From the NCBI GenBank assembly GCA_047495785.1, contig JBLDXI010000007.1, positions 310,001-374,000 on the forward strand: DNA of 64,000 nt. Reading direction: 5' to 3'. Made by a program: the position numbers and the translations under genes. This DNA is from Lepidodermella squamata (taxonomy: Eukaryota; Animalia; Gastrotricha). The notes beneath the pieces were generated by a model. The model made no database searches. It worked only from the letters and a program-made list of their open reading frames with translations, and was not told the DNA's origin. Positions 121 through 63,961 of the stretch are shown in pieces (the stretch's first letter is position 1; each line of letters opens with the position of its first letter).

Positions 121-968
121 AGTGCCTCAACCCGCCGATTCAAACAAAGTTCTGCTCCGGACTGAGCTTGCGGTCTTACTTCGACTATTCTCGCTTCGAA
201 TGCCGAGCATTTTTCGGCTGCCAAAGCGATGACCCAGATGCGAATAACTTCGCCAGCATAGAACTATGCTACCGGTCCTGCGTAAACCAGGCCCGGCTGA
301 CTTCAGCCAGCCGCGATGCCGTCTGTGAACGCGCGCCTGTCTACAACAACTTCTGCTACCACCCGTCAGCGCGGTTCTACTACGACCGAAGCTCGCAGCG
401 TTGCTATAGCTACTTAGGCTGCCCTGTGCCTAAAACGAACAACTTCGGATCTGCGATGGAATGCACCTCGAAATGCAACGCCCCTTATTCGCCCGACTCA
501 ATGCCTATAACTACTAGCTACAACTCTAGCGTCCAACTTGGCGCAACTCGAGGTAAAACCAGCCTGACCCCTGTTGTCAGCCAATCGATCGGCAACCATT
601 ACCAACCGAATTACATCTCAACTGGAAATTACCAGCCTGTAATCAAAGCTCAAAATACTGAAAACTTGACGCCGAAAAAAACTCGACTCGCTCTCCCTGA
701 GGAAAAGGTTACTGAATCCGGAAAGACCCGTGCGGAACTGATTGATTCGTTCTTCGGGCCGAGGAATAAAGATTCAGGGCTGATGACATCGCATAGCTCT
801 GAAATTGAAAAGCCGCTACCGGAGCTATTGACAGACAGCATATTCTCACGTATACCCGGCTTTTCGTCTAAAAGTGACAACTCTAATAATAGGAAGTCGT
901 CGCCGATGGACAAATTCGAGACAGAGTGGCTATTCGGCCGGCCGATTATCAGAACTTGGAGATTATGA
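121..968 (+). CDS. G1: terminal exon of an array member (5' part outside window); 2 variant Kunitz-like domains + S/P-rich tail
   Basis: Acceptor ttgcag|121 (phase 1). CLNPPIQTKFC..CRAFFGC..NNFASIELCYRSC and CERAP..CYSYLGC..NNFGSAMECTSKC each have 6 Cys and the Kunitz NNF-x5-C-x3-C motif. AATAAA at 1066-1071. Confidence 0.85.
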
Positions 969-1759
969 TCGCTATATCATAAGCAAACTCAATAATGGCT
1001 CAAAAATCATCACTATTTTATATATGCTGATAATGGAAATTCACGATTTTTCCGAAATATTCTGTAATAAATTGTTTGGTGAAACCTAATGGACTGATTT
1101 ATAGGAAAATCTTGGGAGATGTTTCCTTTCCAGCGGTAATGAACCCAACATCATAAAAAAAACTAGCACGAATTCTGCTAAATAAGGCATGAGAAAAGAA
1201 AGCTCAGCACATCGCCAATGGATAACGCTTTCCCCTTCCTTCGTCAAATTTCAAGACTGAAATTTCGCAAGCCAAGCCAAATTTTTCCCGAAACATTTAG
1301 GCCATGATCTTCTAAATATTGTTGGACTTCATCCAGGTTAAAAAGAAATGATATAGTTGTATGTATAACATTGCAGTATTTTTCCGACTTTTTGGGGAAA
1401 TTTTCTTAACCCTTTAATTGCAGGAATGTGTAACGAGGACACATCTTTCTTTCCGAATGAAGCAGAAACTAACTAATTTCGAAGCAACAGGAAGCTTTCA
1501 GGCTGAGTGCTTTAGAAAAGCTGAATCCTTGGGCTAATTTCGGTAATTTTCTCATCATTTTATAAAAAAACTTTCGTAGCATGGTGATTTGAAACGTTAT
1601 TTAACTCGAGTAGAGTATAGGGCCCATTTCGCAGTGCTTAACACTCGGTGCGACGCAAAAAAATTAGTCCAAGAGACAATGATTCAGATTTGTTAAAACA
1701 TTCAGACTGAATGCTTCCTGAAGCTTCCTATCTGACCAAGATCAGTCCTATCCAATATA

Positions 1760-1924
1760 CAGGGTTGCCAAAAAATTCCGCAGAAGGCGACGAATTCGAT
1801 GCGCATCAAATTAATGAGGAGTTTTAAGAAGTTGAAGAATTTCAAGCATTCTTTTGACGATGGAACTCGTCATTAAAATGATGCGCATCGAATTTGCCTT
1901 CTGCGGAATTTTTTGGCCACCCTG
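1760..1924. mobile_element. Tc1/mariner-type MITE (165 bp)
   Basis: ~65-bp imperfect terminal inverted repeats CAGGGTTGCCAAAAAATTCCGCAGAAGGC... / ...GCCTTCTGCGGAATTTTTTGGCCACCCTG, flanked by TA on both sides; no coding capacity. Confidence 0.8.
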
Positions 1925-2812: not shown

Positions 2813-5800
2813 ATGCTTGGTCCGGCCAGCAGTTCGTTGCGACTGGCCGTTGTGGTCGCCGGATTCGTCTTGGCACACCTTTCGGCACCCGCTCTCGCCC
2901 GTGAGCTGTGAAAATGTCACATAATTGCGTTTATTTTTTTACCGTTCAACAGAAAATTATCTGTGCCTGCCGAACACCTACATCCCGCCTGATTTCGAAT
3001 TTAATTTACCCGACGCCAAGACCTTTCCTTTCGTCAATGCTGGTTTGCAGATTTTTACCGACTTGCAAATGCCGTGCTCAGGTAGGAATTTTTGACAATA
3101 ATCATTGATGTTTAAAAATAAACTATTAAATTGGACTAATTGATTAATAATTTCAAAATTAGGAAAAATAACCGATTTAACTTCAAAAATAATCAGCTAA
3201 ATTCAGCTTTCAGCTTTCATAATTTTTGTATATCAGGTCTCTTGAATAAATGGCAATTCGTGGCTCGAGTTGCGGTAGTCAAAGGCCTTAACTTGGGCGT
3301 GTTTCGTTGGAAGGATGCCAACACGATGACAATAGTCGGCGTGACGTCACTCGATGGCGTCGAAACTGGCATTGTTAACCAAACTGCGGCCTGGATCGAA
3401 GCCGAAATCCAACAGCCAATCGCCGTTAAACAAGGCGATATGCTAGGATTTTTCTACGACCGACTCGACATTTCCAGCTCGGAAATGGCTCTTCCGACGC
3501 GCCAGGTCGGCTTCTTGGCACCAGACTCTTTACCGCCGACCATTGTCCTACTTCAGGACAAAGCTACGATTGTCCGAAATGGTTTGAAATTGAGAGGAAT
3601 AACTAATCAAAGCTAATACGGGTTCATTTTTTGGTAGGCTTGATTTTCCTTGATCAATCTAATCGTGTCACCCGAGTTCCAGCCCTAGGAGCCGTCCTTA
3701 CTACGTCATCCAATGCCCCAGTTCAGAACCCTGACTCATTTGCGTCCTCGCTTCAGTGCCAAAGAGTCACTAGAATTCCGGAAAATCTGCCCACCGAAAG
3801 AGTTAAGGATTATCCATCAGCCGAGTCAGGTTTACAGGTAAAATCTAAAATGCCTCCTAGATTCGAAAATCTAGGTCAAATTTTCAGATTTTTACCAAAC
3901 TTCAAGTACCTTGCGCCGGCTATATTACTTGGTGGCAATTCATCTCCCGCAATGCGCAAATTATCGGCCTTCATTTAGGAGTTTTCCGGCCAGTCGATAA
4001 CAACGGCCTTCGTCTAATTGGGGAAACCGTCATAGAAAACGTCACAGCTGTCCGATACGTCGATCCTAACGATGGCTGGGTCAAGTATCCTGCTAACCCT
4101 CCAATTTCCGTGAAACCTGGTGATTTCTTAGGTAAAGATATAGGAACCTTTTCATCAGCTTCAAAAACTACCTTATAATGTAGGAATCTTTTACTCGAAC
4201 TTCCTGTCGTCCTCCGATGTCAGCATCGCTACTCGTGAAGATGCAGCATCTTTAGCCTATATCTATTTGAATGACGGCACATCGGTCAAAGTTTACAGTA
4301 GGTTCTTTCACCTAATTTCGATTCGATTTTTTTTATGTGTTCCTTTTAGCCACGTTGAACGGAGATGATGCTACCAGGGTTGGTCGATTGCCGTTGCTTT
4401 ACGCCTATGCCGAGTATCTGGACAATCCGCCGTCAGTGCCACCACCGAACCCTTGCCAAAGTACAACGTGCATGCCTCAGGAGTTCTGCGCCAGCTTGCC
4501 GCCAGCCAACTCGTTCAACTACTACGAGGCTGGACTTTCGGTGTTCACGTACTTGCAAGTCCCTTGCTCAGGCGTCCTCACCGAGTGGAAATTCGTCGTC
4601 AACAACTTTGTTGCAGTTTACGGCCTGCATTTGGGCATTTTCCGCCCGCGCGAGTCCGCACCTCGCTTGGAACTCGTCGCCGAGAATATCATCAATTTCT
4701 CGCCGTTCAACGGCAGTGATGCCAGTCTGGTCTGGGTGACTCGCCCGGCCGAGCCGCCGCTCCAAGTTCAAACCGGTGATTACATTGGCATGTTTTACGA
4801 GCGCATCAACTTGGACCAGAAATATCTGGCTATTCCGGCCCGGCGGAACACCCCAGATACGGCTAATATCCCGCCAACTCTTGTCTACATTGTAGATAAC
4901 TCGCAAATGAGTGTTAACAGTGAGTTTTCGAAATTATACCAAATTTCCACCAGAATACCAGATTAAAATTTCGAACCTCCCCCCGAACAAAAATGTCATC
5001 GCCATCATTTCGCCATTTTTTCGGAATTGCCTAATTGGCCTTAAAACATATCATAAATTTGCATAAAAAGAAATTAAAAAAAAATCCCGAAAAAAATTAG
5101 AAAACTAATTTGTGGAAAAAATCGATAATTTCCTGGTTTTTTAAATATATATGTTTCTGAAATTTCTGACATATTTTGGGTCTGGTGAAAATCTGGTGAA
5201 ATTATTGTTCGGATCAACTCGAAACACGAGTTTCCGTCGTCGAAAAGAGTCCCCCAGTTTCGAAGTCCCAAGTTGTGCAATAAGTCGGGAAATTAGGAGG
5301 TCAAGCTTTTAGCTTTCAATTTTTCGATATTTTTCGCCAATCGACTACACTGTTAAAATTAGAAATTACCGAAGAAGTCCCGAAAAAGTCCCGAAAACCG
5401 AATGGAAACTTGTTCGGTAGTTTTCGGTATTTTTGACGGGTTTTTTCCATTCCCATTGAAACACTTCATAGCTGATTTGCATTTTCATGACTTTTAAATC
5501 ACTCCCGCGAGGCACGAAATCGGAAACTGCCTCTCATTCTTGGATTTCGAACCTTTATCCCAGTATTTGCTTTACTTAAGAGAGATAGATACGGCGTATA
5601 GAAATTTTGATCTCCTTGCAATGCTGCTCAACTTTTTTGAATTCTTAATTTTGTAATCCAATTTTTCTGATAATCATTGAGTTTTGATTCCTAATTGATA
5701 GCAAGTTTTTTCAATTTTCTGTTATTTTCCTAGAGATTTTGGACACCACTACCGCGAGTCAAGATCGTCGTAAACCAGCGTTGATGGCTACGATAAGAAG

Positions 5801-8209
5801 CGGCGGCTACACTACAACTGTGCCACCAACTCGACCCCTGCCATCCACCACACCCTTTTATTTCACAACCCCGAGCCGGGCTACGACAACCACGACCCGC
5901 CCAACGACAACGACCACGACAACGACTACAACCACAACAACCACGCCTATCCCTACGACTACAACCACAACGCGACGTGTCATCACTGTAACAACATCGA
6001 GGACCCCATTGCCGAGGACTGCAACGGAACCGTTCACCGTGCCTATTACGGATACTCAACCGCCGTTTTTCACCATCACCACAAGGACAACGCCAACTAC
6101 AACCACGACTTTACCATGGGTTACTGACGACCCTAATAACTGGTTTACTAATACGATCCCGACAGTGACGACGCCGCGGCCGACTACTACTATCCGGTTA
6201 TTGACGACGCCGACCACTACGACTCCTGATCCTTGGGACAACACAGATGATCCTTGGTTTACTATTACAGATACTACGCCGAGACGAATTACTACTACGC
6301 CTCGTAGGATTCCGATTCCGATTACGACTACAATGGAGCCACCAACTGATGAGCCTGAGATACCCTGGTGGCTTACAACTCGTCCGATTACAACTAGGTA
6401 AGTCGAGAGGGAGCTTTTCTTATCAATTCTTACCTTATTTCATCGAATAGACGACTTACAACTGTCACAAGATGGTTTACCCCGAGTACCACGACTACAA
6501 TACCGGCGGATCAACGAACGACGTGGGTCAATATTCAGCAACAAGCTCAAAGCCGTGAGTTTTATAATGAAAATCTCTCGAAATAGGTTGAAAAAATGAT
6601 GTTGCCTTAGGTTGCAATCTTCAACCGGCGATTCCGCGTAATTGTTACCCGCAGCAGATGCGGTTTTTCTATGACTACTTTGGAGGCGTTTGCAAGAGTG
6701 CCATCGGCTGCCCGGATTTGACGACGGGTGAAACGAACAACTTTCAGTCATTGGCCGATTGCAATATTTACTGCTCACAATCGGGTACGCATTACTCTTT
6801 TAAATATATTTTCGCACCTCTGAAAGGTCAAGGGTCAAGATCGCTTCAACTTCAACCTCTTGATGCCCTATACACTAAATTAATACTAAGATAAATTGTG
6901 CGGCCAACTTGCGGCACCCTAAATTTTGACGATTCCAGCTTTAAATTTGGCCAAAAAATGGATTTTCTGAAAGTGATTCTCGATTTTAGAAACAGAATAT
7001 CTTTTAGCGGAACCAAATTTACGGTGAGCTGGAACCTAATTTGCTGGAGCGGAACCAAATTTGCATTTTGCGGAACCAAAGTCGAAATATACCTAGTGTC
7101 ACTGTTTGAATAATTCTACGAATTTTAGGCGAAGGATCATTTCTCAATTGAACACCCTACCTTATGGAGAATTTTGCGCTGAATTTACTGGTGTTTTTTC
7201 GAATTATTGTGGTCAATCTTCACCCGCAAGAATTATCCGAAAAGTGATTTCAGGCCACTAGAAAATTCCAAAAAATTTGGTTCCGCTCACCGTAAATTTG
7301 GTTCCGGTAAAAGGAAGACCCTTTTAGAAATTAGTGATTTTTCCAACATGAAAAAGAAAATTCCTAGATAACTCGGGGTTCCAAGTGGCTAAAATGAAAA
7401 AATCTTATGGCCATATCATTAACGTCGTTAAATAGTCGGATCTAAGCTTGTTCACCTTAGCTTTAAGGTGGCAGCAAAAGCGGCAAGTAAAACAGCTTAG
7501 TTTTTGCCTTTCACTCACGTGAAAACTACATGCAAACGCCCCTTTTACTGCCACCTTAAAGCTAATCTAAAAAGAAGAAAATCTAAAGAAGAAAATCTAA
7601 AGGAAAAAATGGAAAACCCCTAAAATTGAATATAGCGTTTGAATTTCGTGCTTCGGGTTTAGCTATAGCCACCGGTAAATAGGCCTAATAAAGAGATTTT
7701 TCAAGAAACTTGGTAATTCGAGTTTCGACAATAAGGACGCTTTTTGTACACATTTTTTAGCTGTAATTGAGGAGAAAAATTACTGCTAATTTCTGAAATT
7801 GAGCTATAAATCTAAGGAAATCTAAAGAAATTCTAAAGAAATGGCTCCAGTTTAGGGTTCGTTCGTATGGCTTGCCTGTGGCCATCGTAATTCGTTCAGG
7901 AAATTTCATCGTTGGAAAATGCAATCATTATCCTCATACGTTCACTTTTTAGACTTGACTCCTTTTTCAGAAGCTCGAGCCTCCGAGTGCTTCTTGTCTC
8001 CATCGGCGGCGCTGGTCTGCCCTGTGCCGACTACGCGCTACTACTACAGCATATCGTCGGGCGTTTGCGCGCCTTTCCTGGGCTGCGCCGCAACGGCCGG
8101 CTCGGCGAACAACTTCGCAACGTACAGCGACTGCGCGACCCGCTGCCGCGTTGTCAACCGCCAGCCCGGCATTGTCATCGAGCAGACGACGTTCTTTGCC
8201 AGGAAGTAG
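2813..8209 (+). CDS. G2: multi-exon secreted protein; signal peptide, 3x domain X, long Thr/Pro mucin-like stalk, 2 variant Kunitz domains
   Basis: ATG 2813 MLGPASSSLRLAVVVAGFVLAHLSAPALA; exon 1 2813-2900, intron 2901-2952. NAGLQIF..MPCSG, ESGLQ|IF..VPCAG and EAGLSVF..VPCSG motifs; Thr tract ~5810-6560; Kunitz exons ~6611-6784 and ~7953-8209; stop TAG 8207-8209. Confidence 0.85.
7001..7323. mobile_element. MITE/foldback-like dispersed repeat, copy 1 (in G2 intron)
   Basis: Left CTTTTAGCGGAACCAAATTTACGGTGAGC is the near reverse complement of GCTCACCGTAAATTTGGTTCCGGTAAAAG (ending 7313); second copy at 26856-27107. Confidence 0.75.
7467..7555. mobile_element. Very short TIR element flanked by TTAA (Kolobok-like MITE; class tentative)
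   Basis: TTAA|GGTGGCAGCAAAAG ... CTTTTACTGCCACC|TTAA; the palindromy extends into the flanks (7457-7565). Confidence 0.55.
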
Positions 8210-8516: not shown

Positions 8517-11162
8517 ATGAAGAATAGGCAGATAATGGCGATTGTTTCTCTCGTCGCCATTTTCCGAAGATGTCTCGCAGGTAGCATACGGTTTCCTCTG
8601 ATGATGTAGTTCGCATAGATTTGAAAACAGATTCGAATTTATGTGCGGCTGGCAGCCAACTTCAAATACCCGAAGAGGAAGAATTTTACGAACAATCGAA
8701 TTCGAGGTTCCCATCTGCCGAAGCCGGACTTCAAGTTGGCAATAATTATCAATTAAAATTTCGATAATTTAACTCATTTTACAGATTTTCACAAACTACA
8801 GAATAAACTGCTCAGGTTAGTAAAATCTTCGAGGAAAAATAGATCGGATTTTTTTGTTGATAGGAATTATCACGAAATGGCGACTGATGGCTCGAACTGC
8901 CAACATAACTGGTCTCCACCTAGCTGTTTTCAGATTCCTAAGCCCTCAATTTTTGAAGCTAGTCGGCGAAGTTTACTATAAGAAACACCCATCTGGAATT
9001 ATCGATAACACCCCTAGTTGGATTACTTTGACTTTAGACCAGCCTCTTCGAGTTGAGGCTGGTGACGTAATCGGTAAGAATTTTACGACTTCCACTGGGC
9101 ATTAATTTCAGCTTTAATTTTGGGAAGGAATGTTTTACGATAAATTTACGACCCCTTCAAGTGTGATAGCTGTTGCCTCGCGAGTTTCCGGCGCCAATAA
9201 CACGATCGCCCTTCTGCTAGACAAAAGCCACTTCAAGAACAACAGTTTGAATTTGGATGATGGCCAAAAATGCTTATATTTTTTACTCTGAATTATTTTA
9301 GAAATGGTTTCCATTGTTGGAATACCGTTAATCGCCCGAACCCCAGCTCTGGGCTTTGTTCTCGAGGGTGACATGGATTCGTTTATAACTTCAGCCCCAG
9401 GGCATTGCGTAGCGTCTCGAAATGTGGCTGTTCCCGAGGGCTTCGTCGAAGATGACCCGGGGAACTATCCATTCGTCGAAGCAGGACTGCAAGCAAGCTA
9501 TTAAATTCGCCAATCTGATGTCTATATTGTGACTTATTTTTTTCAGATTTTCGCAAACTTGCAAATTCCTTGCACTGGGTTTTTGAAGGAGTGGCGTTTT
9601 GTAGTTCGCCCACCGGTGATTTTCGGCCTTCATCTGGCTGTTTTTCGTAAACGCGGGTACAACGCCTTTGATCTTATCGGCGAGACTTTGATCGACTCGC
9701 GACTAAGCAACATTACAGATTTCACTTACGGTAACTGGCTATCATTCGTGGCAGATCCGCCGATAGCTGTGATGAAAGGCGATTTTATCGGCATTTACTA
9801 CGACCAACTTAAAACGCGGGACGTTGTCCTAACTATTCCTAGTCGCTTGCCAAATAGGCAAAACTTCGAACGCGGGAAAGCTTTCGTCTTCCTTGCTGAT
9901 AGGAAATCCTTACTCAATTATACAGGTTATTCCTATGTCTTGATATTTGAATTAATCTTTCATAAGAAATTTTAGCTTTAAATGCTGCGACCAGCTTGTC
10001 CCTCGAAAGGATTCCGGCTTTATCGGCGGTTATAGGCGATCTTAAGACCCCGGTTACAACAACCTTGGGGCCTCAAATCTGCGAATCGAATGCCACTGTC
10101 CCAAATGATTTTAGAGACGGCCTACCATCGTCGAACCTTTTTGACCTCTACGAAGCTGGTTTACAGGTCTAAAAATCACACAAATTTCCAAATTTATCGG
10201 TTAATTTTATGCGCAGGTATTCAACTACATGAGAATTCCTTGTAGTGGTGAGATAGGATTTTTGTTATTTCATCGCCTTAATTTCGGATTTTATCATCCA
10301 GGAAAAATAGTTGAATGGAATTTTGTGAGCAAATCTCGCGTTGTTTATGGTCTTCACCTGGCCGTTTTTCGTAAAAATGAATTCGACACAACATTGGAGT
10401 TGGTTGGTGAAACAGCGCTGAGCTACAACCCAAGTGAAGCTGATCCTAATACAAAGGCCTGGATTACGCTGGCAGCGGATCCGCCGATCAACGTTAGGGC
10501 AGGGGATTACATTGGCATGTATTACGATAAATTGGAGACCAGCGACGAATTTCTTACCATACCAAGCACGAGTTACAACCAAGTGCTTTCTGACGGCAAA
10601 AAAGCTACTACCTACGTATGGCTAACAGATAAAACTAGCTTGGATAGAAGTAAGGAATAGCAATTTAATTTTCAAATATTTTTCAAAAATTTATTTAATT
10701 TATTTTAGATTTTGTAGACACCCTAGATGCTATTCTTGTAACTCGAGCTGTAGCCCTAGCTGCGGTTGTTAGGGCAAAAGACAGCCAATCAGACATTTTA
10801 GTCTCGGCCGAAGAGGATGACATAATTCCTATAAGGACATATCCAAGCCATACAGAACCACATATTACGACCCGAATGACTACGTCAGTCGCGATTGTTA
10901 CTCTAGGTGGCGTAGCTGCTCCTAAAACCGATCGTAATTTTTCATGAATTAAAGTTCCTGGCTATATAGGTTTTATTTTCGTTTAGGATGTAGCACAAGG
11001 AGACCAAAGGCCTTATCGAAGTGTGACTCGTGGCGGTTCAAATTTTCCTACGATCCTCGCATGAATGCTTGCCGTTCGTTTTGGAGCTGTGAAACGTCAG
11101 ATTTCGGCTTCTCAACCCGCTCGGAATGCCTGAAAACTTGCGCCGAGGCTTCACGCTTCTAG
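8517..11162 (+). CDS. G3: secreted protein; 3x domain X, short linker, 1 degenerate Kunitz-like domain
   Basis: MKNRQIMAIVSLVAIFRRCLA (exon 8517-8580). Three EAGLQ/GLHLAVFR/GD.IG sets; 31-nt mini-exons; GC-AG intron 9493-9546; last exon CSTRRPKALSKCDSWRFKFSYDPRMNACRSFWSC..GFSTRSECLKTC*; AATAAA 11267-11272. Confidence 0.85.
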
Positions 11163-17038: not shown

Positions 17039-17070
<32 letters not shown>

Positions 17071-17264
17071 AGCCGTTACAGCAGGTGGAAGCAAGGCCGC
17101 GGACGAGTCTTCGAATGCAACAGCAACCTCTTAGCAACAATGGATACCTCAGTTTAGACAACCAGCCTAATATGTTCAATAACTTTGCGAGTTTTCTCGC
17201 TCCTGGCATGCCTCGTTCTGTTGGCGTGTTGCCAAATAACCTCAATCAAGGATCAAAAAAGTAA
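15008..17264 (+). CDS. G5: secreted protein; 1x domain X, Ala/Gln repeat, 2 variant Kunitz domains, poly-Thr, poly-Gln and N/F-rich tail
   Basis: MSLLMTLVLFTLFTHQSHA..FPFLEAGLQ|IF..IPCDGYLKEWRF..MHLGIFR; Kunitz CKTFYGC and CYSFYGC; an in-frame-looking intron (~16529-16581) is hidden inside ORF 16305-17264. Confidence 0.85.
16002..16123 (+). repeat. Coding low-complexity repeat (QAAA)n/(AQ)n in G5
   Basis: [39 protein letters not shown], with synonymous variation among codons. Confidence 0.9.
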
Positions 17265-25880: not shown

Positions 25881-25953
25881 TAGACATAATAACTAAATTT
25901 AGATATACCAAAATCCACAACTAGCTTATATGCTATCCCGAATGGAGGTAGAT

Positions 25954-26824: not shown

Positions 26825-26855
26825 TATCATAAAACCAGGATATTATAATATCTTA

Positions 26856-52900: not shown

Positions 52901-53641
52901 ATTTCCAAGCAACACAGATAACCTATTTAAACCTAATCTCTCGAGGAATAACTGTTTGCGAAGCTAAAAGTAGCAACGCGACCTTGGTAAGCTGAAGAAA
53001 AAAATTATTGAAATTTTGACCTCTCCTTTCGCAGACAACTTTTGCAGATCTCCAAAGCTGTTTAGACTTCTCTGGGGTATGTTCTTTTAGCATTCGTTTT
53101 TTTCTTGATTTTCTTGCCAATTTTATAGGACAACAGAAAAGTTTGCGGGGAAATAAATGGCGATTTCGGAGCTTGTGTTGACAGTAAAGCTGACTGTACG
53201 ATTATTGGTGCAATGCCGGTAAGATTTGACCCAGGTTAAATTTGAAAATTTTCAATTCTTTTTAATTTTTGTAGTTCCGAACTCATCCTACTAACACTGA
53301 TTGTGCTGCAGAGGTTGACAAGTATTACGTGAGTGAATGGTTTTGTTCGCCGTAAAATTTGACCCATTTTTTAATGAATAGGCCACGTGCATCCAGGTCA
53401 AGCCAGATGGCAAATGGTTCTGCTCAACAATGGCGAAAGACTCTATTGTATGTGTATCATCACAATTATTTACACAGATATTTTTTTCATCATAATGTAC
53501 CTATCTATCTTGCAGAGTTGTTATCAAAGCGATGTAACTTGCCAGGCTGCGTTCGAACAAGCGCATAACCGCAGCATGATGCATGGGAAAAGTCCGGCGA
53601 ATAGTCTATCATTTTTAACGGCATTTTTTCGGCACCGCTGA
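49906..53641 (+). CDS. G17: secreted protein; 2x domain X, Thr/Arg linkers, 3 tandem copies of a 10-Cys module
   Basis: MRSSFYLFVIFMTFGRRAQA; large exon 50201-51562; then a chain of small phase-0 exons (51613-53641) that splice into one open frame ending ..TAFFRHR*. Confidence 0.8.
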
Positions 53642-54175: not shown

Positions 54176-56261
54176 ATGCCGTATCAAGTTGAACTAATTT
54201 ACTGCATCCTGTTGCCGTTGCTAGGGCTGGTCTCTTTGATTAAAGGAGAAGTCTGCTCATCACCCGACGGCACCCTCGTGCCAAGGGAGTACAACCGCAC
54301 CATCGTCCTAGGCCGGCATCAATACATCGAGCCGTACCTGCAGATCTACACGAACCGCAAGGTTGAATGCGACGGATTTTTGTCCGAGTGGCAATTTGTG
54401 GCTCGCAATAAAATCGTCTACGCGCTTCATATGGCCGTTTTCCGCCAGGAGAACTCAACAGCGCTATTCCGCCTCATCAACTCGACCTTCATCCCGCTGA
54501 GCGCTGTTCGAAATTACAAGGGCCGCCCGACGTGGGTGAGCCACAAGCTCAGCGATCCGATCCCAGTTAAAACCGGCGACTATCTCGGCGTTTTCTACGA
54601 AAAATTAGACGTGCCTCAGAAGCTGTTGACAATCATTACCCGGTCGACTGGTAACGGCATTGAACCGAACAAAATTCAGAACACGTATTTGATCCCTACT
54701 AGTAATCAAAAGTTGAGCGCAGAATCAGCTGGGCCTAATTACGTTATTGATGTTAGAGCTGATAATACTTTGTTCGAAGATCGCGAACCTGCGTTATCTG
54801 CTATCATCTCACGGGTGAGAAGTGTTCGTAATGACGTAGTCGCTGGTCCGAAATCTCCGCTGGCGGAGGTTTTCCCATTCAGGCTGCTAGGCCCGGCTTT
54901 TGACAACGACCCAAGCCTTGGAACTCTTAGCGCTGGTACGGAAACTTGCTCACCCTCCTCCGGATCTTCGTTCGTCTCGGCTTTCAGAGGAATGAAGCTG
55001 GTTTTTGGTGACCATAGGTATTACCCATCTCTCGAAGCTGGAATGCACATCTTCGAAGAACTTCGAGTAGGTTCCCCCTTAAATTTAATATTCAAAATTA
55101 ATTGTTAAATTTGTTAGGTTCCATGCAAAGGATTTTTATTAGAATGGAACTTTCTAGCCCCAAGCACCGACCATCACTTTATGTACGGGTTGAACCTGGC
55201 AGTTTTCCGCCCGGTCGATAAATCAATGACAGCTTTCAGAGTCATTAATGAAACGAGGATCGGAGTTGCCCGCATCACGCCGACAATTGCCGGTAAATGG
55301 GTTGCCTACACCCTGCCGGCTGATAAACGCCTACCAGTTGAAGCTGGCGATTACCTAGGATTCTTTTACAATCAATTCAAAACTATGTCCCACTTCCTTA
55401 CCGTCGCGACAAGCAATGACGATCTCGGGAATAATTTCAGAACTTGGGTGTTCGAATACGATAAGAGGACAATCGAAAGTCCTATGTCAAATCGTAATTT
55501 AGTTTTTTTTACTCAAAATTCAAGTTGTTATATCGATTTTTAGGGACGGTTTACTCTAAAGAGGCAATCAAAACCCGCCGCCGGCCGGCTTTAGCTGCCA
55601 AGGTTGGATTGCCGAGTGGGGGCCGAACCGACCTGGTCTCCATCGAGACCACGAAGGTGCCTGAAATAACCAGCATGCGGACGGTTAGAACATCGACGAC
55701 AACGGCTGGTACGACCACGGTCACTAAAATGACAACGACCCGAACCCGCATCCGGTTGAACGTGATTGGCTCTGGAAAAACGACATGCACCGCCTCGAGA
55801 ACCAACACTTCAATCGTGAGTGCATTGAAATTATTCGAAAAATTCAATAATTTATTTAAAAATTTCAAATAGTTCGAGTTCGAAAATCCTGAACAGTGCA
55901 AAATTTTCACTGGTGACAATAGACGTGAGTGCAAAATTGAAGCGGCTGCGGATGGCAGTGGCTACGGCATTTGTGTATCCACCCTGGCTGATTGCGAGAG
56001 AATAGGCGGCGAGAATGTGAAATTGCACCGCGTCGCCACGCTTTGTTACGCTGTTGTTAACCGCAATTACGTAAGAATCCAGCTTAAAAAAATTACAATT
56101 TTGCTGACTCATTTTATATTTTGCAGAGATCATGCCTTCATGAAGATGCTGAACAACAAATGTACTGCTCACCTGTCTCGGCTAAATCTCTACGCTGCTT
56201 CCCGAAAAACTCTGAATGTCAAGAATTTATCAATAATAACTTTTATGCTTATGATACTTGA
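54176..56261 (+). CDS. G18: secreted protein; 2x domain X, Thr linker, 1x 10-Cys module
   Basis: MPYQVELIYCILLPLLGLVSLIKG; EPYLQIYTNRKVECDG; EAGMHIFEELR|VPCKG; module LNVIGSGKTTC..FENPEQCKIFTGDNRREC..CFPKNSEC; TGA 56259-56261. Confidence 0.85.
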
Positions 56262-56583: not shown

Positions 56584-59500
56584 ATGACGAGAGACTTTCG
56601 GATTATCTGGCTATTTTTAGCCTCATGTCTAGCCATCAATGCTCAAGATTTAGGTAATTTTCCTATCACGGAAATTTACCAATAATTTTCAATTTCGTTT
56701 CAGACGAAACGTGCCCCCGAAGTGGCACCCTAGTTCCCCCTGCGGGCCTTTTCGAGCCGAAATTTTATAAAATATCCGACGCTGGTCTTCAAATATTCAC
56801 CAATCGAAGAGTTATTGCTATTTACATCTGCGTAGGAATTTTTTGTAATTTTATGCCTTTCAGATTCCTTGCGATGGCGATTTGAATGAATGGAAATTTG
56901 TGGTAGAAAAAAACTTCACGTATCGCTTGTATCTGGCCGTATTTCGGGCGATGGATATCCTGCCGAGCGGCGAGATCGCTAAGTTTCGACTTGTTGGCCA
57001 GACGAATCTTTCGGCTATCACCGCCATAAAAATTCCACAGCCTTCAAATGAAACAAAATTTTGGACAAATTTCTACCCGAAAATTCTTATACCTGTCAGA
57101 CAAGGAGATTACCTCGGCATTTACTACCAAAAATTCAGCTCAAGCCATAAATTGTTGACCATTTTGAATGCGCGGATGAAACGAGAGGCCACTCGCGATT
57201 GCGCTCGAAAAGGCGTTACTTACGTATGGCAAGCCGATGCAAATGATACGAGCATCAATGAGCCCGCTTTAGTTTCTGCATCGTGTGAATTTCGCGAGCC
57301 TGCTCTTGCTGCTATCATTAGGTTTTTTTACTTATAAGCTTTCCGAAATGTTTTACATGGGGTATTTGTTGAATAGTGGGGTTCCAGTGGTAAAAACACG
57401 TGCCCCTCCGACAATTCCCACAACATCTACTACGACAACTACGACGACTTCCACGCCAACAACTACTACTACAACAAGAACAACAACTACAACGACCCCT
57501 CCAACAACTCCTCCGGAATACACCACGTTCGTTTCATAGTGAAGTTATTCGAATATCGAATAGCAGGATCCTGAATGAAAGCCAATGATTGATCAGAAAC
57601 AAAAACGGATGAAAATTCGGGTTCTTAGCTTGTGAAATCCCCTCAATTAGGGCCCTGAGAAGGACTGGGGAATGTTAATTAATTAATTTTAACATTTTTC
57701 CAGTAGATGTGTTTCGTTGTTACAGGAATTTTTTAATATGAAATTCGCTTTTTCAAAATGTTATTAGTCCAACGAATTAATTTATTGACCTTTTTACTAT
57801 GATATAGAGATGTAAATGGGAATGCTGTGTCAACCCGTACACCAAGACTGCCGAGGACGACTACTACTACGACCACTTCTACGACAACGACGACTACGAC
57901 TACAGAAACAATGTCAACAACAACCAGGCGTAAGAGTCATTTTTCAAATGTCTTCTATTATTTTGTGACACGAGATTGTTCTGTCAGCTAAATGTTCAGA
58001 AAAAGATAGCTTGATTGATCCGTTGGATAAAGAATCGCAAGATCAGTGGCAAAATCCGTCTTACTTCAAGTTTCGCGAGGGCGGCCTTCAAATTTTCAAC
58101 AAGTTGAAGGTTCCTTGTAACGGCTATTTGGTCGAGTGGATATTTTTGATACCTAAAAACCTCGAGGTTATCTCCAATTTAACGCTTGCCGCTTTTCGCC
58201 TCAATCAAACTTCAATGGAATTCGAAGTCGTCGGCTCAAATCCCTTGCCTTACATTGCCTTGAAAGTCGCTAAAACTGACAAATTTGCAGGGCTCGTTAC
58301 TTATAGCCTTCCAAGGCAGAAGCAATTCTACGTTGAAAAAGATGACCTCCTCGGTAAGAAATATTATAATAGAGACATTCGAGCATATGCCTCCTATTTT
58401 TTTTGATCAGGCTATTATTACGATCGATTCGCTTCCAATCTTTTCAATCTTTCTATCATATCGAACCCAGCGCGTGATCGAAGCGAGGCGTCAAAGACTT
58501 GGGTCTTCCAATTAGGCGCTAAGGAGTTGAATGAACAAAACAGTTACGAACCACTTTAAACTGGGACACTGAATTTGAACTATATTTACTCCAGGAACCC
58601 TGCCGTTAAGTGACGCTATTGAATCGTTCCGGTTGCCAGCATTGCGTGCGAAAGTTAACATTGAGCCTAGGTATAAGACGTGTCCCTATACAGCTATAAT
58701 CATCAAAAATGATTGAAATTTCAAAAAGGGTGACTCGGCCGGTCAGGTCGACTACCACGGCAACCCCAACGACAACAACCCCAGACATTTTTGCGCCAGT
58801 AACCAAGTTCCGCCGCACGACGTTTTGGCCAACAATACCAGGTGTAACCCCACCAAGAACGACCCTGCCTCCAGATGCGGTTTATTTCAACGTGTTGGCT
58901 CGCGGCCAAGCAGAATGTGGCTTCACCCAGGACAGCTCGACCTTGGTTGAATATTACTTTTGACAGCAAAATTCTTATACATATTTTTTCAGGTTGCTTT
59001 TGACACTGCTGAGCAATGCCAGAAATTCATCGGGGTGAGTTTTTCATAAAATCATAGTTAGCTCTCACTTTACATTTACTTGACGGAATAGAATCAAAAG
59101 TATCAGTGCAGAGGTCCACGAAGTGTATTCAGCGTTTGCGTTGACTTTACGGCTGATTGCTCATTCCTGATGGAGGGAGCCGAAGTGGTTAGTTTGAAAT
59201 TAACAATTTTGCCGTTCCCAAGTCAAATTTTCATCTTACAGAATAAAAATTACAAAAACTCGTCGGAATGCTTCACAGACATAGCTGCGAGTCAGGTAAA
59301 TTTACCTTATTTCTACGCATTAATTATTAACATGAGAATTTATCTATATCATAACAGCCGACTTGTCTTCATATCAGCAATACTGTGAGCATTTTACAAC
59401 CGCAATTTTACTGATGTTATAAGTTGAAATTTTCTCAGGGTCAAAAATTCTGCTCAACACTGAAAACGACTGCTCTGGTAATAACAATTTAGATATCTTT

Positions 59501-59628
59501 TTAACTTAATGACTCGATTCGAATGCATTTATCAGGCTTGCTACGCTAGCTATAGAATGTGTCAGCGTGCCGTCACCGGAATCCGAATGTCAGCGAAAGC
59601 AGCAAGCTCTTTCATAAAAATAGCTTGA
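56584..59628 (+). CDS. G19: secreted protein; 2x domain X separated by Thr tracts, 1x 10-Cys module
   Basis: MTRDFRIIWLFLASCLAINA; DAGLQIFTNRR|IPCDG; EGGLQIFNKLKVPCNG; module over 7 exons including a 27-nt exon PTCLHISNT; TGA 59626-59628. Confidence 0.8.
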
Positions 59629-59782: not shown

Positions 59783-62234
59783 ATGCAGGTGCTAATAGGC
59801 TTATTAGCCTTGATGCTGACTTTTGGCAGGCGAGCCTCAAGTTTTGACTGCCCTGTTGAGTCATCTCCCGTGCCTACGACAGGCCGCCAGTTACCGTCCC
59901 TCTACCCACTGACCGAGACCACGCTCAACATTTACACCCATCTATCAATTGGATGTAATGGCTTCATCAATGAATGGCAATTGGCGGCTCAAAACCAGGC
60001 TGTTTTCGCGTTGAATCTCGCGATTTTTAGAATATCACAACGAGCGGCTGACGGGCGACCTTCAGCGTTCAAATTGATCAATATGACTCACCTCGACCTA
60101 ACAGTCATCTATGAATACAAAACTCAGCCGTTATGGGTTAGATATTACCCGAAATCGCCTATTCCCGTTATGGAAGGGGACATTATCGGTAGGTTAAGGG
60201 TTCAACAACGTAACGAATTGTCAGCAAATTTATTAATATAGGCACGTTTTACGATCGAACCAGAATACCTGTAAAGCTGCTGACCATCAAAACGCGAAAA
60301 GCTCCAACCCCACCCACTGCTTTTTTTGTTCCGAATACTTTCATTTTGAAAATGACTGCCAAAGATTTCGGTGAGTCTATCGCGTGAAAATATGTTTGAT
60401 TTTTATTGTTTTTTTCTGAAAGCTGATAATGAAACAATCGATCTAAATGAACGCAGCTATTTGTTTGAATATCGAGATGTCGCGCTAGTTGCTTTCGTCA
60501 GCGGTAACAAGAAAAGGCTCATTCGTTCGACAACTACAACTACAACGACATCAACTACTACAACCGAACCAACTCCAAGAAGGCCGGGTTTCCCCCAAAC
60601 CACGTTGAATAATACCACTACATTTCCAACTAACAGCAGAGGTATGAATCGCCCCCGAAAATTCAGAGAAAATTCCTGTATCATTTCTGTAATAGTGGTT
60701 GACTGTTCCAATGATGATAGCTACGTCTGGGCTGGCGAGGGGACCTTCCCGTTTGATGCCGATAATTTCGTGAAGACCCAGTACAACCTGTACGAAGCTG
60801 GCCTGCAGATTTTTGAAGAGCTACGAGTTTCATGCCGCGGTTATTTAGTTGAATGGGACTTTCTATCGCCACCAATCAAACAAAAAACGATTCATAACCT
60901 GACATTAGGCGTGTTTCGCCTTTCACCTACCGATAGCTCGGTTTTCCGATTGGTTGGATCGACTAAAATTACGTCACTCACTGTCCCTCCGCATTTGATT
61001 GACCGATGGGTGGCGTTACCTTTGGCACCGCGGCAACAAATTGCTGTGGAACCTGGAGATTACTTGGGTAACATACAGGATGATTGCTGATTACTGAATA
61101 TTTACGATGTTTTTTCCAGGATTTTATTACAATCGCTTCGATACAACTGCGGAGAATCTGACTATCAGGACTAGCGTCAGTGTTGATAAAACTTACCCAA
61201 CGTGGGTTTTCGAGAGTGACGCAACGCAACTGAACAAATCCAATTGTAAGAACATTTCCTTTATCATTTTTTAGTGATTTTATCCTGTTTTGTTTCAGTG
61301 ACTATATCAAAAAAAGACGCTGGAAAGGTTTATCGTCGACCGGCATTGCTGGCTAAAATTAACAGGGAAAATCGGTTGTCGACTCCCAAGCCTACAACGC
61401 CTAGTGATGGTATTTTCACCTTCCCGCCTGACTTCGATCCGAACAAAATCAAAGACACGACTGAAGTAAAGTTCCACGGCAATTTCCTCAGAATTTTGAG
61501 CCGTGGGAATTCGGAATGTTCTTTCACTCGAGACAGCGCGGCTCTGGTGAGAAAATTACTGTTATCCTAATACGGCTTTTTAATTATCGCCTTCATAGCT
61601 TGAGTTTGACAACAACAAGGACTGTACCAATTTTGTTGGGGTATGGCTTTCATATTTTCGCTGAATTTATTTTGTCTATAAGCATTGAAATTGAAGAATA
61701 AGTTGAAGCTCTGCATTCATCCGACCAAGGTCTTCGCAGTTTGTGTTAACAGTGCTTCTAACTGTTCTGTCATCGGGGCGAGAACGGTACAGTATATTTT
61801 TTAGCTGCAACAGAAAGTTTACAGGTTGCAACTTCAAATAGATCGAAGTCTTCGATGAATTTCGTGAATGCCTTGATCAAGTTGAAAAGTATCAGGTAAT
61901 TTTGCAAAATGTTTATTTTTATATTGCATCAATTTTTGACATTTCAGTCCACATGTATTCACGTGGATCAATGGGTATGATCTGCTTTATTATTTGGGGA
62001 TTTATTCATTTAATTTTTATTATAAGGGTGAACGATTTTGCTCTACTTTTCGATCTCCTGCTACATTGGTAAGCTAAACTGTGAATCCAAGCGATAGGTC
62101 TATATTTTTTTATGGTATTTCAGGGCTGCTTCTCCAATGACTACCAGTGTCAGAAAGCTACTTTGAGAACGCTTCAGTTCGATTCAACAAGAGATCGTCC
62201 TGTTCTGAAGCTGGCCCGTTTCGCTAAAACTTGA
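59783..62234 (+). CDS. G20: secreted protein; 2x domain X, Thr linker, 1x 10-Cys module; same module exon structure as G19
   Basis: MQVLIGLLALMLTFGRRASS; ETTLNIYTHLSIGCNG; EAGLQIFEELRVSCRG; module LRILSRGNSEC..CFSNDYQC with 27-nt exon STCIHVDQW; TGA 62232-62234. Confidence 0.8.
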
Positions 62235-63332
62235 AAAAGCGAGCTTATAAACTGAAAAGTGACCATCTGTTTTATTTACCTGTGGAATTTATTCTAAAGA
62301 AATAAATAATGATAAAAATAAAATAATTAGATTAGATATGTAATAGTTGATCACTACTTCTTACGGCTGAGTTGCTCGTGGGCAGGATCAAAAGAATCAC
62401 ACTAGAGAAATCTCGATATTGTTTTTGTTGTTGATGTTTGAATAACTTTACATTGGCTGCTTGTCATTACGATATATAAGGTCAAGAGAACATATGGTCA
62501 TGGCGGAGCAACACTTGAAAAATACCTGTCACAAACGCGTGTGAACATGCGAGGTCTCGTCTAATTGTTGTTTTCTGCGCTACGCCGCGCGCCAACGGAT
62601 CAAGCGTGTTATTAAGCAAAAAACACCTCAGCGCACCTGGGCTGGTTTTTTTCGCGTTAACACTCTAGGTAAACATTATTTCTGACAAATTATGCTTTTA
62701 ATGCGGGGGGATACCTATTTTATTTTCAAACAATATTCCCGACACTAATCATTTAGATTTTAAATACCAGTCTTGAAAAGACATGTTATTACGAACTTCG
62801 CTGCTTCGGTGCAGAGAAATTCGCTCAATTTATAAAAAAAAGCCTCTCTTTTTAATCAATTAAGAAGAATTGAGTTTGTCGTAATTAAATTTTCAAACAA
62901 ACTTTAATGTTTTTTCAGAGAAATTTAATTAATTTATTAGCTGAAAATAATCTATGATTATGAACACTTTTTATGTTGTATTTTCCGGCTGGTTTTTAAA
63001 ATGCCAGCAAATTAACTGGTGTCTGAGAACTATTGCGAGCGCGCGTCTTGCTACGCGCGACACTTGTCACCTTGAGTGAAGCGTACCCACAACTGCGATA
63101 TAAAGACACCGCCGAAACCACATCCTTCATCGGCTTTTCTAATTACCATGCCGATGGCTTTTGCGACGACGGCAAAGATGACGCGCTCTAGCATTAGAAA
63201 AATGTCTTTTACTGCGCTTCATTGTTGTCGCTACTATACTGCATTTGCTGCGCAGTTTTCACAGCAGAAATAAAACAATGCTAGCCAACTGTTTTATAAG
63301 GATATTTTTTACGAATTTTTCCTGACTTTTTG

Positions 63333-63961
63333 ATGGGTCCTAATTTACTCATACCCATCGGCTTGCTTCAAGCCCTCGTTTTTGCCGGCACAGCGCTTGG
63401 TTTGTTTTTCTTCGCACTGAAAAAATCTGATGAGGAAAAAATTATATCCACAGCTCAGCAACAATGCCCAAGGCTGCTGGATACCATGGTTCCACCGAAT
63501 TTTGTTATGGAACAGAGCACGAGATATACGAATCGCGAAAGTGGCCTACAAATCTTCACTGAACTCAGAATCCCATGCGATGGTGATTTTTTAATATTCC
63601 TAATCTCAGCGATTTTAAAACAAATTTTCAGGCTACATTACTGAGTGGCGTTTTATCGCGGCGAATCCACTTGTTTACGGACTCCATTTAGCCATTTTCC
63701 GCCCAACCACAGCTGGGTCGGTGAAATTCATCGACGAAAGCTATTTGGAAGCGCTTTCGACGCCGAACAAAGAGGGCGGCGTTTGGATTTACTACCCGTT
63801 GGACACGCCGATTCAGGTGAAAACGGGCGACTACGTCGGCATGTTCTACGACCGATTTAAAACATCCTACGATTTACTAACGATTAGCAGTCAAACTGTT
63901 GACTCGAGCACGCCGCCAACTTACGTTTTCATCATGGACGATCCTTCGATCAAAAAATCAC
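63333..63961 (+). CDS. G21: array member, 5' part only (signal peptide + domain X; continues beyond window)
   Basis: MGPNLLIPIGLLQALVFAGTAL|; ESGLQIFTELRIPCDG|YITEWRF..GLHLAIFRP..VKTGDYVGMFYD; donor gtgagt at 63962. Confidence 0.85.

What the first reader, a model, noticed from the sequence alone, without database searches (positions are those of the whole stretch)
121..63961. Uninterrupted array of at least 21 modular secreted-protein genes built on an unrecognised domain: candidate undescribed extracellular system
Seen: every gene I can model in 64 kb is on the + strand and belongs to one family. The layout is signal peptide + 1-3x domain X, usually a Thr/Pro stalk, then a swappable end: variant Kunitz x1-2, 10-Cys module x1-3, or none. 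No unrelated gene intervenes, none shows an obvious transmembrane anchor, and the array runs off both ends. Most paralogs are very divergent yet keep open frames, implying an old, selected expansion. Inference: a combinatorial secreted toolkit, either a structural/adhesive matrix (cuticle coat, eggshell, mucus, glue) or a diversified binding/effector repertoire. The sequence alone cannot separate these.
Basis: partly seen in the sequence, partly recalled or inferred. Interest (0 to 1): 0.92.

Follow-up and report, generated by a model that had tools for sequence, protein, structure and literature searches.

The report
Secreted lectin-like, mucin, Kunitz gene array
This stretch of an unidentified small-intron animal genome is a real, old tandem array of about 21 genes for secreted proteins, built from an unnamed sugar-binding-like domain, a mucin-like stalk and a swappable cysteine-rich end; the family is new to the databases but of a familiar kind.

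Summary
In 64 kb I find 31 copies of domain X and 17 Kunitz-like domains, all on the + strand. They fall into 19 complete and 2 cut genes, each starting with a signal peptide. No unrelated gene lies between them.

Domain X matches no Pfam model and no solved structure by sequence. With a 54-sequence alignment it folds confidently (pLDDT 92.9) as a galactose-binding-domain-like jelly roll. Its nearest structures are phage tail-tip domains, the Cwp84 lectin-like domain, esterase carbohydrate-binding modules (CBMs) and F-type lectins.

Domain X is not private to this animal. A profile search finds 153 proteins. The closest are metagenome proteins with the same X, stalk, Kunitz layout. The distant ones are "uncharacterized" mosaic proteins of molluscs, a sea star, a hemichordate and nemerteans.

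Two predicted introns are confirmed by spliced contigs of a 2015 run. At least seven paralogs pair with proteins from other organisms, so the expansion is old.

The + strand array spans about 107 kb. It ends 0.8 kb past the window, next to housekeeping genes.

Best reading: glycan-binding, O-glycosylated coat or mucus proteins with protease-inhibitor-like or cross-linking ends, assembled by phase-1 exon shuffling. Function is inferred. Calling it a "system" is not shown.

Other first-stage notes of this scan on this same window had already listed domain X, the 10-Cys module and the chimeric gene.

The parts
1..968 (+). G0, 3' part of a gene cut by the window start: two Kunitz-like domains (123-281, 324-476) and a Ser/Thr/Asn-rich tail; stop at 968
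2813..6894 (+). G1: SP, X, X, X, a stalk of about 230 aa (5781-6532), Kunitz (6613-6774). A further Kunitz exon at 7988-8146 may belong to it
8517..11162 (+). G2: SP, X, X, X, Kunitz (10998-11141)
11402..13822 (+). G3: SP, X, X, X, no cysteine-rich end found
15008..17264 (+). G4: SP, X, Ala/Gln-rich linker, Kunitz x2 (16284-16442, 16701-16859), poly-Thr, Gln/Asn-rich tail
17975..19039 (+). G5: SP, X, short Thr-rich stalk, no cysteine-rich end
20972..22283 (+). G6: SP, X, Thr/Pro stalk, no cysteine-rich end
23493..25290 (+). G7: SP, X only; 3' end uncertain. Chimeric duplicate: its start exon is 100% identical to G8's, and its X exons and introns are 79% identical to G10's
28159..29971 (+). G8: SP, X, stalk, Kunitz x2 (29416-29574, 29663-29818)
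30786..32983 (+). G9: SP, X, long stalk (31752-32468), Kunitz x2 (32538-32702, 32777-32935)
34059..35795 (+). G10: SP, X, stalk, Kunitz (35391-35558)
36123..37605 (+). G11: SP, X, stalk (36801-37097), Kunitz (37180-37317)
37872..39146 (+). G12: SP, X, stalk, Kunitz (38970-39113)
39673..41239 (+). G13: SP (MSIPFLLLAGFSAVVTG), X, stalk, Kunitz (40808-40957), Asn/Gly/Phe-rich tail
42864..45390 (+). G14: SP, X, long linker, Kunitz x2 (44348-44506, 45025-45189), Asn/Gly/Phe-rich tail
46560..48180 (+). G15: SP, X, X. Counterpart of metagenome protein P0002 (48% identity; both domains pair at 100 support)
49906..53641 (+). G16: SP, X, stalk, X, stalk, 10-Cys module x3 in mini-exons (51625-53640). Intron 50149-50200 is confirmed by an RNA joint; the 3' end is uncertain
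54176..56261 (+). G17: SP, X, X, stalk, 10-Cys module x1 (55915-56225). Intron 55494-55543 is confirmed by an RNA joint
56584..59628 (+). G18: SP, X, stalk, X, stalk, 10-Cys module x1
59783..62234 (+). G19: SP, X, stalk, X, 10-Cys-like end
63333..64000 (+). G20, cut by the window end: long hydrophobic N-terminus (signal peptide or signal anchor), then X. Two Kunitz domains follow at L006:363-779, after which the array ends

Best explanation
The window is the 3' two-thirds of a tandem array of paralogous genes about 107 kb long. The genes encode secreted, non-anchored mosaic proteins.

Each protein has four kinds of part:
- A cleavable signal peptide.
- One to three copies of domain X, about 170-190 aa. 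It is a disulfide-braced beta jelly roll of the galactose-binding-domain-like (lectin/CBM) fold.
- Usually a Thr/Pro-rich stretch that would be heavily O-glycosylated and act as an extended mucin-type stalk.
- A cysteine-rich end: one or two variant Kunitz domains, one to three copies of a locus-specific 10-Cys module, or nothing.

How it most likely works (inferred): domain X binds a glycan or polysaccharide of the animal's own surface coat, mucus or egg envelope, or of microbes caught in it. The stalk spaces and hydrates. The Kunitz or 10-Cys ends inhibit proteases or cross-link the layer. The array would then supply a set of coat or mucus proteins with graded binding and end functions.

Shown here: the family grew by whole-gene tandem duplication, ends were swapped by phase-1 exon shuffling, the expansion predates the split from the nearest sampled relatives, and at least several genes are transcribed and spliced as modelled.
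For: Array and architecture.

Secretion: signal peptides on all 20 start exons and no internal hydrophobic span.

Fold:
- The AF2 model has pLDDT 92.9 and pTM 0.89.
- VIA-align Z scores: 11.4 (167 aligned residues) to a Bxb1 tail-tip domain, 8.7 to the Cwp84 lectin-like domain, 7.8-8.1 to polymer- or carbohydrate-binding modules of esterases, 6.5-6.8 to F-type lectins, and 5-6 to many CBM32 and discoidin domains.
- Foldseek agrees.

Disulfide: C3 and C41 are conserved in 45 and 52 of 54 sequences, which fits an extracellular disulfide.

Company kept elsewhere: Sushi, CUB, astacin, C-type lectin, ApeC, F5/8C, SUEL lectin and VWD/C8/TIL in mollusc, sea-star and nemertean proteins. These are extracellular recognition and mucin-type contexts.

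Exon shuffling: 87 of 142 modelled introns are phase 1, and Kunitz exons are 1-1.

Age: cross-organism pairs have 99-100 support, and the same array layout appears on a relative's contig, L001.

Transcription: GT..AG joints in X1 at 50148>50201 and 55493>55544 match my models exactly. X1 also holds 35% of the sampled words of 28.1-38.1 kb.
Against: - No ligand, tissue or localisation is known.
- A shared fold does not show sugar binding, and the best structural match is a phage tail-tip domain of unstated function.
- The residues conserved in domain X (C, G, W, R, V, GD, G, Y) lie mostly in strands and turns. They look structural, so no binding site is identified.
- The P1 position of the Kunitz loop is S/Y/P/D/T/F/V and only once R. 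Many copies may not inhibit trypsin-like proteases at all.
- Three to five genes have no cysteine-rich end.
- X1 is RNA only by inference, and its contigs are low-depth. It did not cover 52.05-53.45 kb, which holds most of the 10-Cys exons.
- The gene models are my own heuristic and are uncertain at several 3' ends.
Confidence: 0.5

Rival explanations
1. This is a diversified immune or recognition repertoire. Domain X copies are pattern-recognition lectins with variable loops aimed at microbial glycans. The Kunitz ends neutralise microbial proteases. The array is kept diverse by host-microbe conflict.
For: - The array is large and its paralogs share only 25-45% identity.
- Loops are more variable and richer in indels than strands: 3.08 against 2.46 bits, and gap fraction 0.18 against 0.07.
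- The Kunitz P1 residue is hypervariable.
- In other phyla domain X sits beside ApeC, C-type lectin and Sushi domains, which are typical of invertebrate immunity.
Against: - Several paralogs have one-to-one counterparts at about 50% identity in distant relatives. This points to long-term conservation rather than rapid turnover.
- Only one young duplicate, G7, is seen.
- No induction data or dN/dS could be obtained, because synonymous sites are saturated at this distance.
- More variable loops are expected in any beta-sandwich family.
Confidence: 0.25
2. This is a structural matrix or glue in which domain X is a protein-protein assembly module, for example an oligomerising jelly roll as in TNF/C1q or viral capsid and cement proteins, and not a lectin. 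The stalks and low-complexity tails would drive self-assembly of a cuticle, eggshell or adhesive.
For: - Jelly rolls of capsid, cement and tail proteins are among the best structural matches: Z 9.9 for a cyanophage capsid-associated chain, 8.3 for a PBCV-1 capsid protein, 5.3 for a phage cement protein.
- Foldseek lists many TNF-family chains.
- Several genes end in Asn/Gln/Gly/Phe-rich low-complexity tails.
- The conserved residues look structural.
Against: - TNF-family matches are poor, with TM 0.2-0.3 and rmsd 7-12 A.
- The model is a single compact domain, and no oligomer was tested.
- Most of the ranked list is carbohydrate-binding modules and lectins.
- Elsewhere domain X is interleaved with true lectin domains in a VWD/C8/TIL mucin-type protein.
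Confidence: 0.15
3. These are products of a specialised secretory gland (adhesive, salivary, prey-capture or digestive secretion), comparable to Kunitz-rich gland secretomes. Domain X would target the secretion to a substrate.
For: - Kunitz-rich secreted families in tandem arrays are typical of gland secretomes (established knowledge; tick sialome papers appeared).
- Kunitz is hugely expanded in this genome.
- Other secreted Kunitz fusions have been noted in this genome.
Against: There are no expression data by tissue, and the animal is unidentified, so no gland can be named. Nothing here separates this reading from a general surface coat.
Confidence: 0.08

Closest known systems
Galactose-binding-domain-like lectin/CBM modules (F-type lectins, discoidin/F5-8C, CBM32, Cwp84 lectin-like domain, esterase CBMs)
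   Same: Same fold class: a beta jelly roll of about 150-190 aa, with Z 5-8.7 over 105-150 aligned residues. Extracellular, used in one to several copies in mosaic proteins, and found next to real F5/8C and SUEL lectin domains in a sea-star protein.
   Different: No sequence-model membership, with nothing in Pfam even at E 5. It has its own conserved motif set (C..G....W.F, LHLAVFR, V..GD.LG.FY, R.PA..A) and an N-terminal disulfide. No ligand-binding residues can be mapped.
Mycobacteriophage Bxb1 tail-tip protein domain (PDB 9d93, chain Pa, residues 216-407) and the Douge central fibre
   Same: Best structural match: Z 11.4, 167 aligned residues, rmsd 3.5 A; Foldseek E 2e-4.
   Different: Only 11-15% identity, and it lies in a phage tail protein. 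The profile search did pick up a few bacterial-looking proteins at weak E-values, so a very old common origin is possible but not shown.
Kunitz/BPTI domains at the C-terminal end of matrix proteins (collagen VI alpha3 and VII, papilin, AMBP-type fusions)
   Same: Six-cysteine Kunitz modules, Pfam PF00014 above cut-off. They are placed at the C-terminal end of secreted mosaic proteins and encoded by phase 1-1 exons.
   Different: Cys4 is shifted: 5 residues between C30 and C38 instead of 7, and 15 between C38 and C51 instead of 12. P1 is rarely basic. The partner domain is new.
Mucin-type lectin mosaics of marine invertebrates (for example Patiria miniata LOC119721398, with VWD/C8/TIL, F5/8C, SUEL and domain X)
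   Same: They contain recognisable domain X copies, with E 6e-14 for the whole protein and 4-5 stretches. They are secreted and glycan-related.
   Different: They are giant single-copy mosaics, not a tandem array of small X, stalk, Kunitz proteins. Only the N-terminal two-thirds of domain X aligns. All are annotated 'uncharacterized'.

Membership tests
Kunitz/BPTI (PF00014) | Match to the family model above the curated cut-off | tested here: met
   34.1, 35.0 and 28.7 bits against a cut-off of 21 for three ORFs. 17 copies were found with a window-trained HMM.
Kunitz/BPTI (PF00014) | Six cysteines with canonical spacing C-8-C-15-C-7-C-12-C-3-C | tested here: inconclusive
   Six Cys are present in 13 of 17 copies; in the other four the first Cys lies outside the matched exon. 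Spacing is 8-9/15/5/13-18/3, so Cys4 is shifted while overall length is kept. This counts as a variant, not a failure.
Kunitz/BPTI as trypsin-type inhibitor | Basic P1 residue (Lys/Arg) after Cys2 | tested here: not met
   P1 is S, Y, Y, P, D, Y, S, T, F, D, T, Y, V, R, T, P, F. Only one copy has Arg. Tyr or Phe in 7 of 17 would suit chymotrypsin-like targets.
Galactose-binding-domain-like fold (lectin/CBM jelly roll) | Jelly-roll beta sandwich superposable on members over most of the domain | tested here: met
   Model pLDDT 92.9. Z 8.7 to Cwp84 lectin-like, 7.8-8.1 to esterase CBMs, 6.5-6.8 to F-lectins, and 5-6 to CBM32 and discoidin domains.
F-type lectin / discoidin / CBM families (sequence families) | Match to the Pfam model or to the family's ligand-binding motif | tested here: not met
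   None of 13 copies has a significant Pfam match; the only hit is CBM_17_28 at E 0.098 (whole-ORF E 0.019, 15.4 bits against cut-off 25) in one copy. The domain X regions of distant homologues are also blank.
Lectin (function) | Demonstrated carbohydrate binding | not testable with these tools
   This needs a glycan array or pull-down with recombinant domain X.
Mucin-type stalk | Long Thr/Pro/Ser-rich, low-complexity stretch in a secreted protein | tested here: met
   Stretches with at least 12 Thr+Pro per 25 aa occur in 15 of 19 modelled genes. They reach about 230 aa in G1 and include runs of 12-14 Thr. O-glycosylation itself was not tested.
TNF/C1q-like trimeric jelly roll | Close superposition on TNF-family protomers | tested here: not met
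   Foldseek TM 0.18-0.31 and rmsd 7-12 A.
Apextrin C-terminal domain (ApeC, PF16977) | Match to the family model | tested here: not met
   There is no hit in the window copies. In mollusc proteins ApeC and domain X occupy different regions.

The most novel reading that the evidence does not exclude
Domain X defines a previously unnamed, ancient family of metazoan extracellular lectin-like modules. It is missing from the usual model organisms and therefore never annotated. In this animal it has been built into a combinatorial set of about 30 genes for binder, mucin-stalk and inhibitor proteins that together make a specialised extracellular layer or defence coat.
Probability: 0.3. Interest if true: 0.6.

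Novelty: new variant of a known kind. Interest (0 to 1): 0.42.

Why it matters
The finding gives a name-worthy, well-modelled domain family. There are 153 profile hits in 1.84 billion representatives, none matches a Pfam model, and every one whose source name I could look up is called "uncharacterized". The family sits in extracellular mosaic proteins of several marine invertebrate phyla.

It is also an unusually clean natural example of exon shuffling. One binding-type domain is combined with different ends inside a single array.

If domain X is a lectin, it adds a family to the invertebrate glycan-recognition toolkit, and it marks the surface or mucus proteome of a poorly sampled animal lineage.

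The finding does not by itself open a long-standing question. Large lineage-specific arrays of secreted proteins are common in invertebrate genomes.

Tried and rejected
- Pfam on ORFs, on all 13 aligned copies and on homologues' domain X regions gave no family.
- A PDB sequence-profile search gave only chance hits at E 0.1.
- A word-indexed homologue search with the 310-aa ORF gave nothing. The exhaustive profile search was needed.
- 10-Cys module: the only Pfam hit is PTN_MK_N at E 0.019, below cut-off. The Atlas gave no usable hit. There is no copy in the retrieved homologues and none elsewhere in the genome at this sensitivity.
- Identifying the animal failed. An intronless HSP70 is only 73-83% identical to any protein and about equally close to molluscs, arthropods and tardigrades. 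No mitochondrial COX1 is in the assembly. No nematode cuticle-collagen N-domain was found, but that control also rang nowhere. Run and organism names are coded.
- dN/dS was not computed, because the nearest orthologues are about 50% identical in protein and synonymous sites are saturated.
- One literature search by descriptive terms found no paper on this architecture. This is weak evidence of absence.
- Rfam found no RNA family in the window.
- My first-pass gene finder merged or skipped exons and was replaced by a PWM and intron-length version. Some 3' ends and tiny exons remain doubtful.
Full report
WHAT IS THERE

The window is G000:C7:310001-374000 of a 121-Mb assembly. The genome is eukaryotic. 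Genes have GT..AG introns with a sharp length mode of 50-56 nt and the consensus GTAAGT...TTTTTAG.

Starting from one domain copy, I iterated an HMM on all six-frame stop-to-stop fragments. It gave 52 exon-level matches, every one on the + strand. A second HMM, seeded on one Kunitz-like stretch, found 17 copies, also all on the + strand. Pfam confirms these as Kunitz_BPTI above its cut-off.

A scan for signal-peptide-like start exons, plus one found by eye, gives 20 starts. Each lies 150-350 nt upstream of a domain X copy.

GENE MODELS

I wrote a small exon-chaining program that uses codon log-odds, splice-site weight matrices and an intron-length prior. In most spliced products the domain X HMM is matched end to end (positions 1-131). 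That is an internal check on the splicing.

Two modelled introns (50148>50201 and 55493>55544) coincide exactly with the only two GT..AG "skip" joints seen in contigs of a 2015 public run, X1. This also shows that X1 is RNA-derived, although it is labelled only as a guess.

The result is 19 complete genes and two cut by the window ends, with 31 domain X copies in all. Two layouts occur:
- SP-X(1-3)-[Thr/Pro stalk]-Kunitz(0-2), for the genes at 2813 to 46560.
- SP-X-[stalk]-X-[stalk]-10-Cys(1-3), for the four genes at 49906 to 59783.

The ten longest remaining ORFs on either strand have no significant Pfam match; one has a chance-level hit at E 0.038, below cut-off. Rfam finds nothing in the window. 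No hydrophobic span lies inside a gene body.

EXTENT OF THE ARRAY

The last gene's two Kunitz domains lie 0.4-0.8 kb past the window. Uroporphyrinogen-III synthase and gamma-glutamyltranspeptidase follow on the - strand. A weak, sub-threshold PSF1-like match and a protein kinase follow on the + strand. The array therefore ends there.

Upstream, + strand members begin at C7:267.8 kb, with ten more X and ten more Kunitz copies. A looser group of six X copies lies on the - strand at 188-247 kb.

Genome-wide there are at least 114 exon matches to domain X, with further clusters on C13, C15, C19 and C32.

DOMAIN X

No copy matches a Pfam model. The only hit is CBM_17_28 in one copy (E 0.098; E 0.019 on the whole ORF), well below cut-off. 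No solved structure matches by sequence.

An exhaustive profile search of 1.84 billion representatives finds 153 proteins, 57 of them below 1e-10:
- The best hits are unnamed proteins from ENA metagenome assemblies. They have the same layouts (X-X, or X-stalk-Kunitz). One 10-kb contig, L001, repeats the array arrangement on one strand.
- The named hits are all "uncharacterized". They come from Babylonia, Haliotis and Mactra (molluscs), Patiria (sea star), Glandiceps (hemichordate), and Lineus and Tubulanus (nemerteans).
- In those proteins domain X sits among Sushi, CUB, astacin, C-type lectin, ApeC, kringle, F5/8C, SUEL lectin and VWD/C8/TIL domains. The domain X regions themselves are blank in Pfam.
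- ESM-Atlas neighbours are unnamed eukaryotic clusters labelled Porifera and Annelida.

With 13 sequences the AF2 model was mediocre, at pLDDT 74. With a 54-sequence alignment, A2, it reaches pLDDT 92.9 and pTM 0.89.

The fold is a beta jelly roll of the galactose-binding-domain-like class. Z scores are:
- 11.4 over 167 aligned residues to a Bxb1 phage tail-tip domain.
- 9.9 to a cyanophage capsid-associated chain.
- 8.7 to the lectin-like domain of Cwp84.
- 7.8-8.1 to polymer- or carbohydrate-binding modules of esterases.
- 6.5-6.8 to F-type lectins.
- A long tail of CBM32, discoidin and PHR domains.

TNF-family matches are poor, with TM 0.2-0.3.

Across A2 the near-invariant positions are C3, P12, C41, G43, W48, R66, V107, G110, D111, G114 and Y117. 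Strands are more conserved than loops (2.46 against 3.08 bits), and loops carry more indels. The C3-C41 pair fits an extracellular disulfide. No binding site can be read from this.

THE ENDS

The Kunitz copies keep six cysteines and the NNF motif. They have 5 instead of 7 residues between the third and fourth Cys, and a compensating longer following loop. The P1 residue after Cys2 is S/Y/P/D/T/F/V and only once R. They are true Kunitz modules, but few can be trypsin inhibitors. Some may target chymotrypsin-like enzymes, and others may be structural.

Kunitz is a promiscuous module in this genome, with at least 149 exon matches and 352 candidates. Earlier notes of this scan describe lipocalin-Kunitz and ankyrin-CCP-Kunitz fusions elsewhere in the genome.

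The 10-Cys module of about 105 aa is real. Its pieces recur three times in G16 and once each in G17 to G19. It has no Pfam or Atlas relative and no other copy in the genome at the sensitivity used. X1 contigs cover only its first exons.

HOW THE FAMILY GREW

Of 142 modelled introns, 87 are phase 1. The signal exon ends in phase 1, and Kunitz exons are 1-1. This is the classic signature of exon shuffling of extracellular modules.

In a maximum-likelihood tree of 74 domain copies:
- Domains cluster by position. The first, second and third domains of G2 and G3 pair with each other, as do the first and second domains of G16 to G19. Whole multi-domain genes were therefore duplicated.
- At least seven window paralogs pair with a metagenome protein at 99-100 bootstrap rather than with a neighbour. 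Examples are G15 with P0002 for both domains, G2 with P0001, G9 with P0028, G11 with P0026, G12 with P0024, and G13 with P0031/52/57.
- These counterparts are only about 45-58% identical. The duplications are therefore old, and the copies have been kept open.

One young event is visible. G7 has a 205-nt start region 100% identical to G8's, and 795 nt of exons and introns 79% identical to G10's.

WHAT IT MOST LIKELY DOES

Shown:
- The products are secreted and modular.
- They carry a lectin/CBM-type fold.
- Several genes are transcribed.
- The family is old and maintained.

Inferred:
- Domain X binds glycans or polysaccharides.
- The Thr/Pro stretches are O-glycosylated stalks.
- The Kunitz and 10-Cys ends inhibit proteases or cross-link.
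- The products populate a surface coat, mucus or egg envelope.

I give this reading about 0.5. The main rival, at 0.25, is an immune recognition repertoire. It is consistent with the variable loops and variable P1, but it fits less well with one-to-one conservation across distant relatives. An assembly or matrix role for domain X (0.15) and a gland secretion (0.08) cannot be excluded.

Nothing shows that the genes form a cooperating "system".

LIMITS

- The animal is unidentified.
- The RNA evidence comes from low-depth contigs of one run.
- The gene models are heuristic.
- No function was tested.

Noticed in passing
window 23387-23591 and 28053-28257; 23773-24555 and 34181-34939: A 205-nt stretch covering the promoter-proximal region and signal exon is 100% identical between G7 and G8. 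G7's domain X exons and introns are 79% identical to G10's. G7 lacks a stalk and an end, and is followed by 3.7 kb without features. It is a young chimeric duplicate, possibly decaying. An assembly artefact is not excluded for the 100% block.
   Followed up: partly
window 63333-63420: The last gene starts with a hydrophobic run of about 25 residues followed by KK (…LLIPIGLLQALVFAGTALGLFFFALKK…). This is longer than the other signal peptides, so it could be a type II signal anchor. That would make it the one membrane-tethered member.
   Followed up: no
whole genome G000: Kunitz domains are massively expanded, with at least 149 exon matches above the Pfam cut-off and 352 candidates. Dense clusters lie on C15 (1.33 Mb), C17 (2.41 Mb), C25, C26 and C29.
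   Followed up: partly
window 16900-17264, 40960-41239, 45190-45390: Several genes end, after the Kunitz domain, in Asn/Gln/Gly/Phe-rich low-complexity tails, for example a run of 11 Gln, or NNNLFNPFVNMFGSFPQMFGNNNN. These resemble self-associating or coacervating sequences.
   Followed up: no
window 15900-16230: An (Ala-Gln)n and Pro-rich linker of about 170 aa in G4 takes the place of the usual Thr/Pro stalk.
   Followed up: no
window 52500-55850: The DNA run X2 shows blocks of paired contigs at about half depth that differ by clustered SNPs and small indels. This suggests two haplotypes, so the individual or culture is heterozygous at this locus.
   Followed up: no
window 51613-53641, 55915-56225, 59122-59630, 61600-62234: The 10-Cys module of about 105 aa is split into 3-5 phase-0 mini-exons. 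It has no Pfam or Atlas relative and was found only at this locus in the genome.
   Followed up: partly
L006 (C7:374001-384000): The array is bounded downstream by housekeeping genes: uroporphyrinogen-III synthase and gamma-glutamyltranspeptidase on the - strand, and a protein kinase on the + strand. One + strand ORF has only a weak, below-cut-off match to the GINS PSF1 C-terminal domain (E 0.0044).
   Followed up: yes
proteins P0059, P0067, P0070, P0094, P0101 (one search hits): A few weak profile hits (E 1e-10 to 1e-5) look bacterial, with lipoprotein-like or Bacteroidota-type signal peptides and no Cys. This echoes the structural match to phage and bacterial lectin-like domains. It may indicate very deep homology or may be chance.
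   Followed up: no
contigs C25/C26, C30/C50 and C28/C33 of G000: Pairs of contigs give identical scores for the same domain matches, so the assembly probably contains uncollapsed haplotigs. Family counts are inflated accordingly.
   Followed up: no
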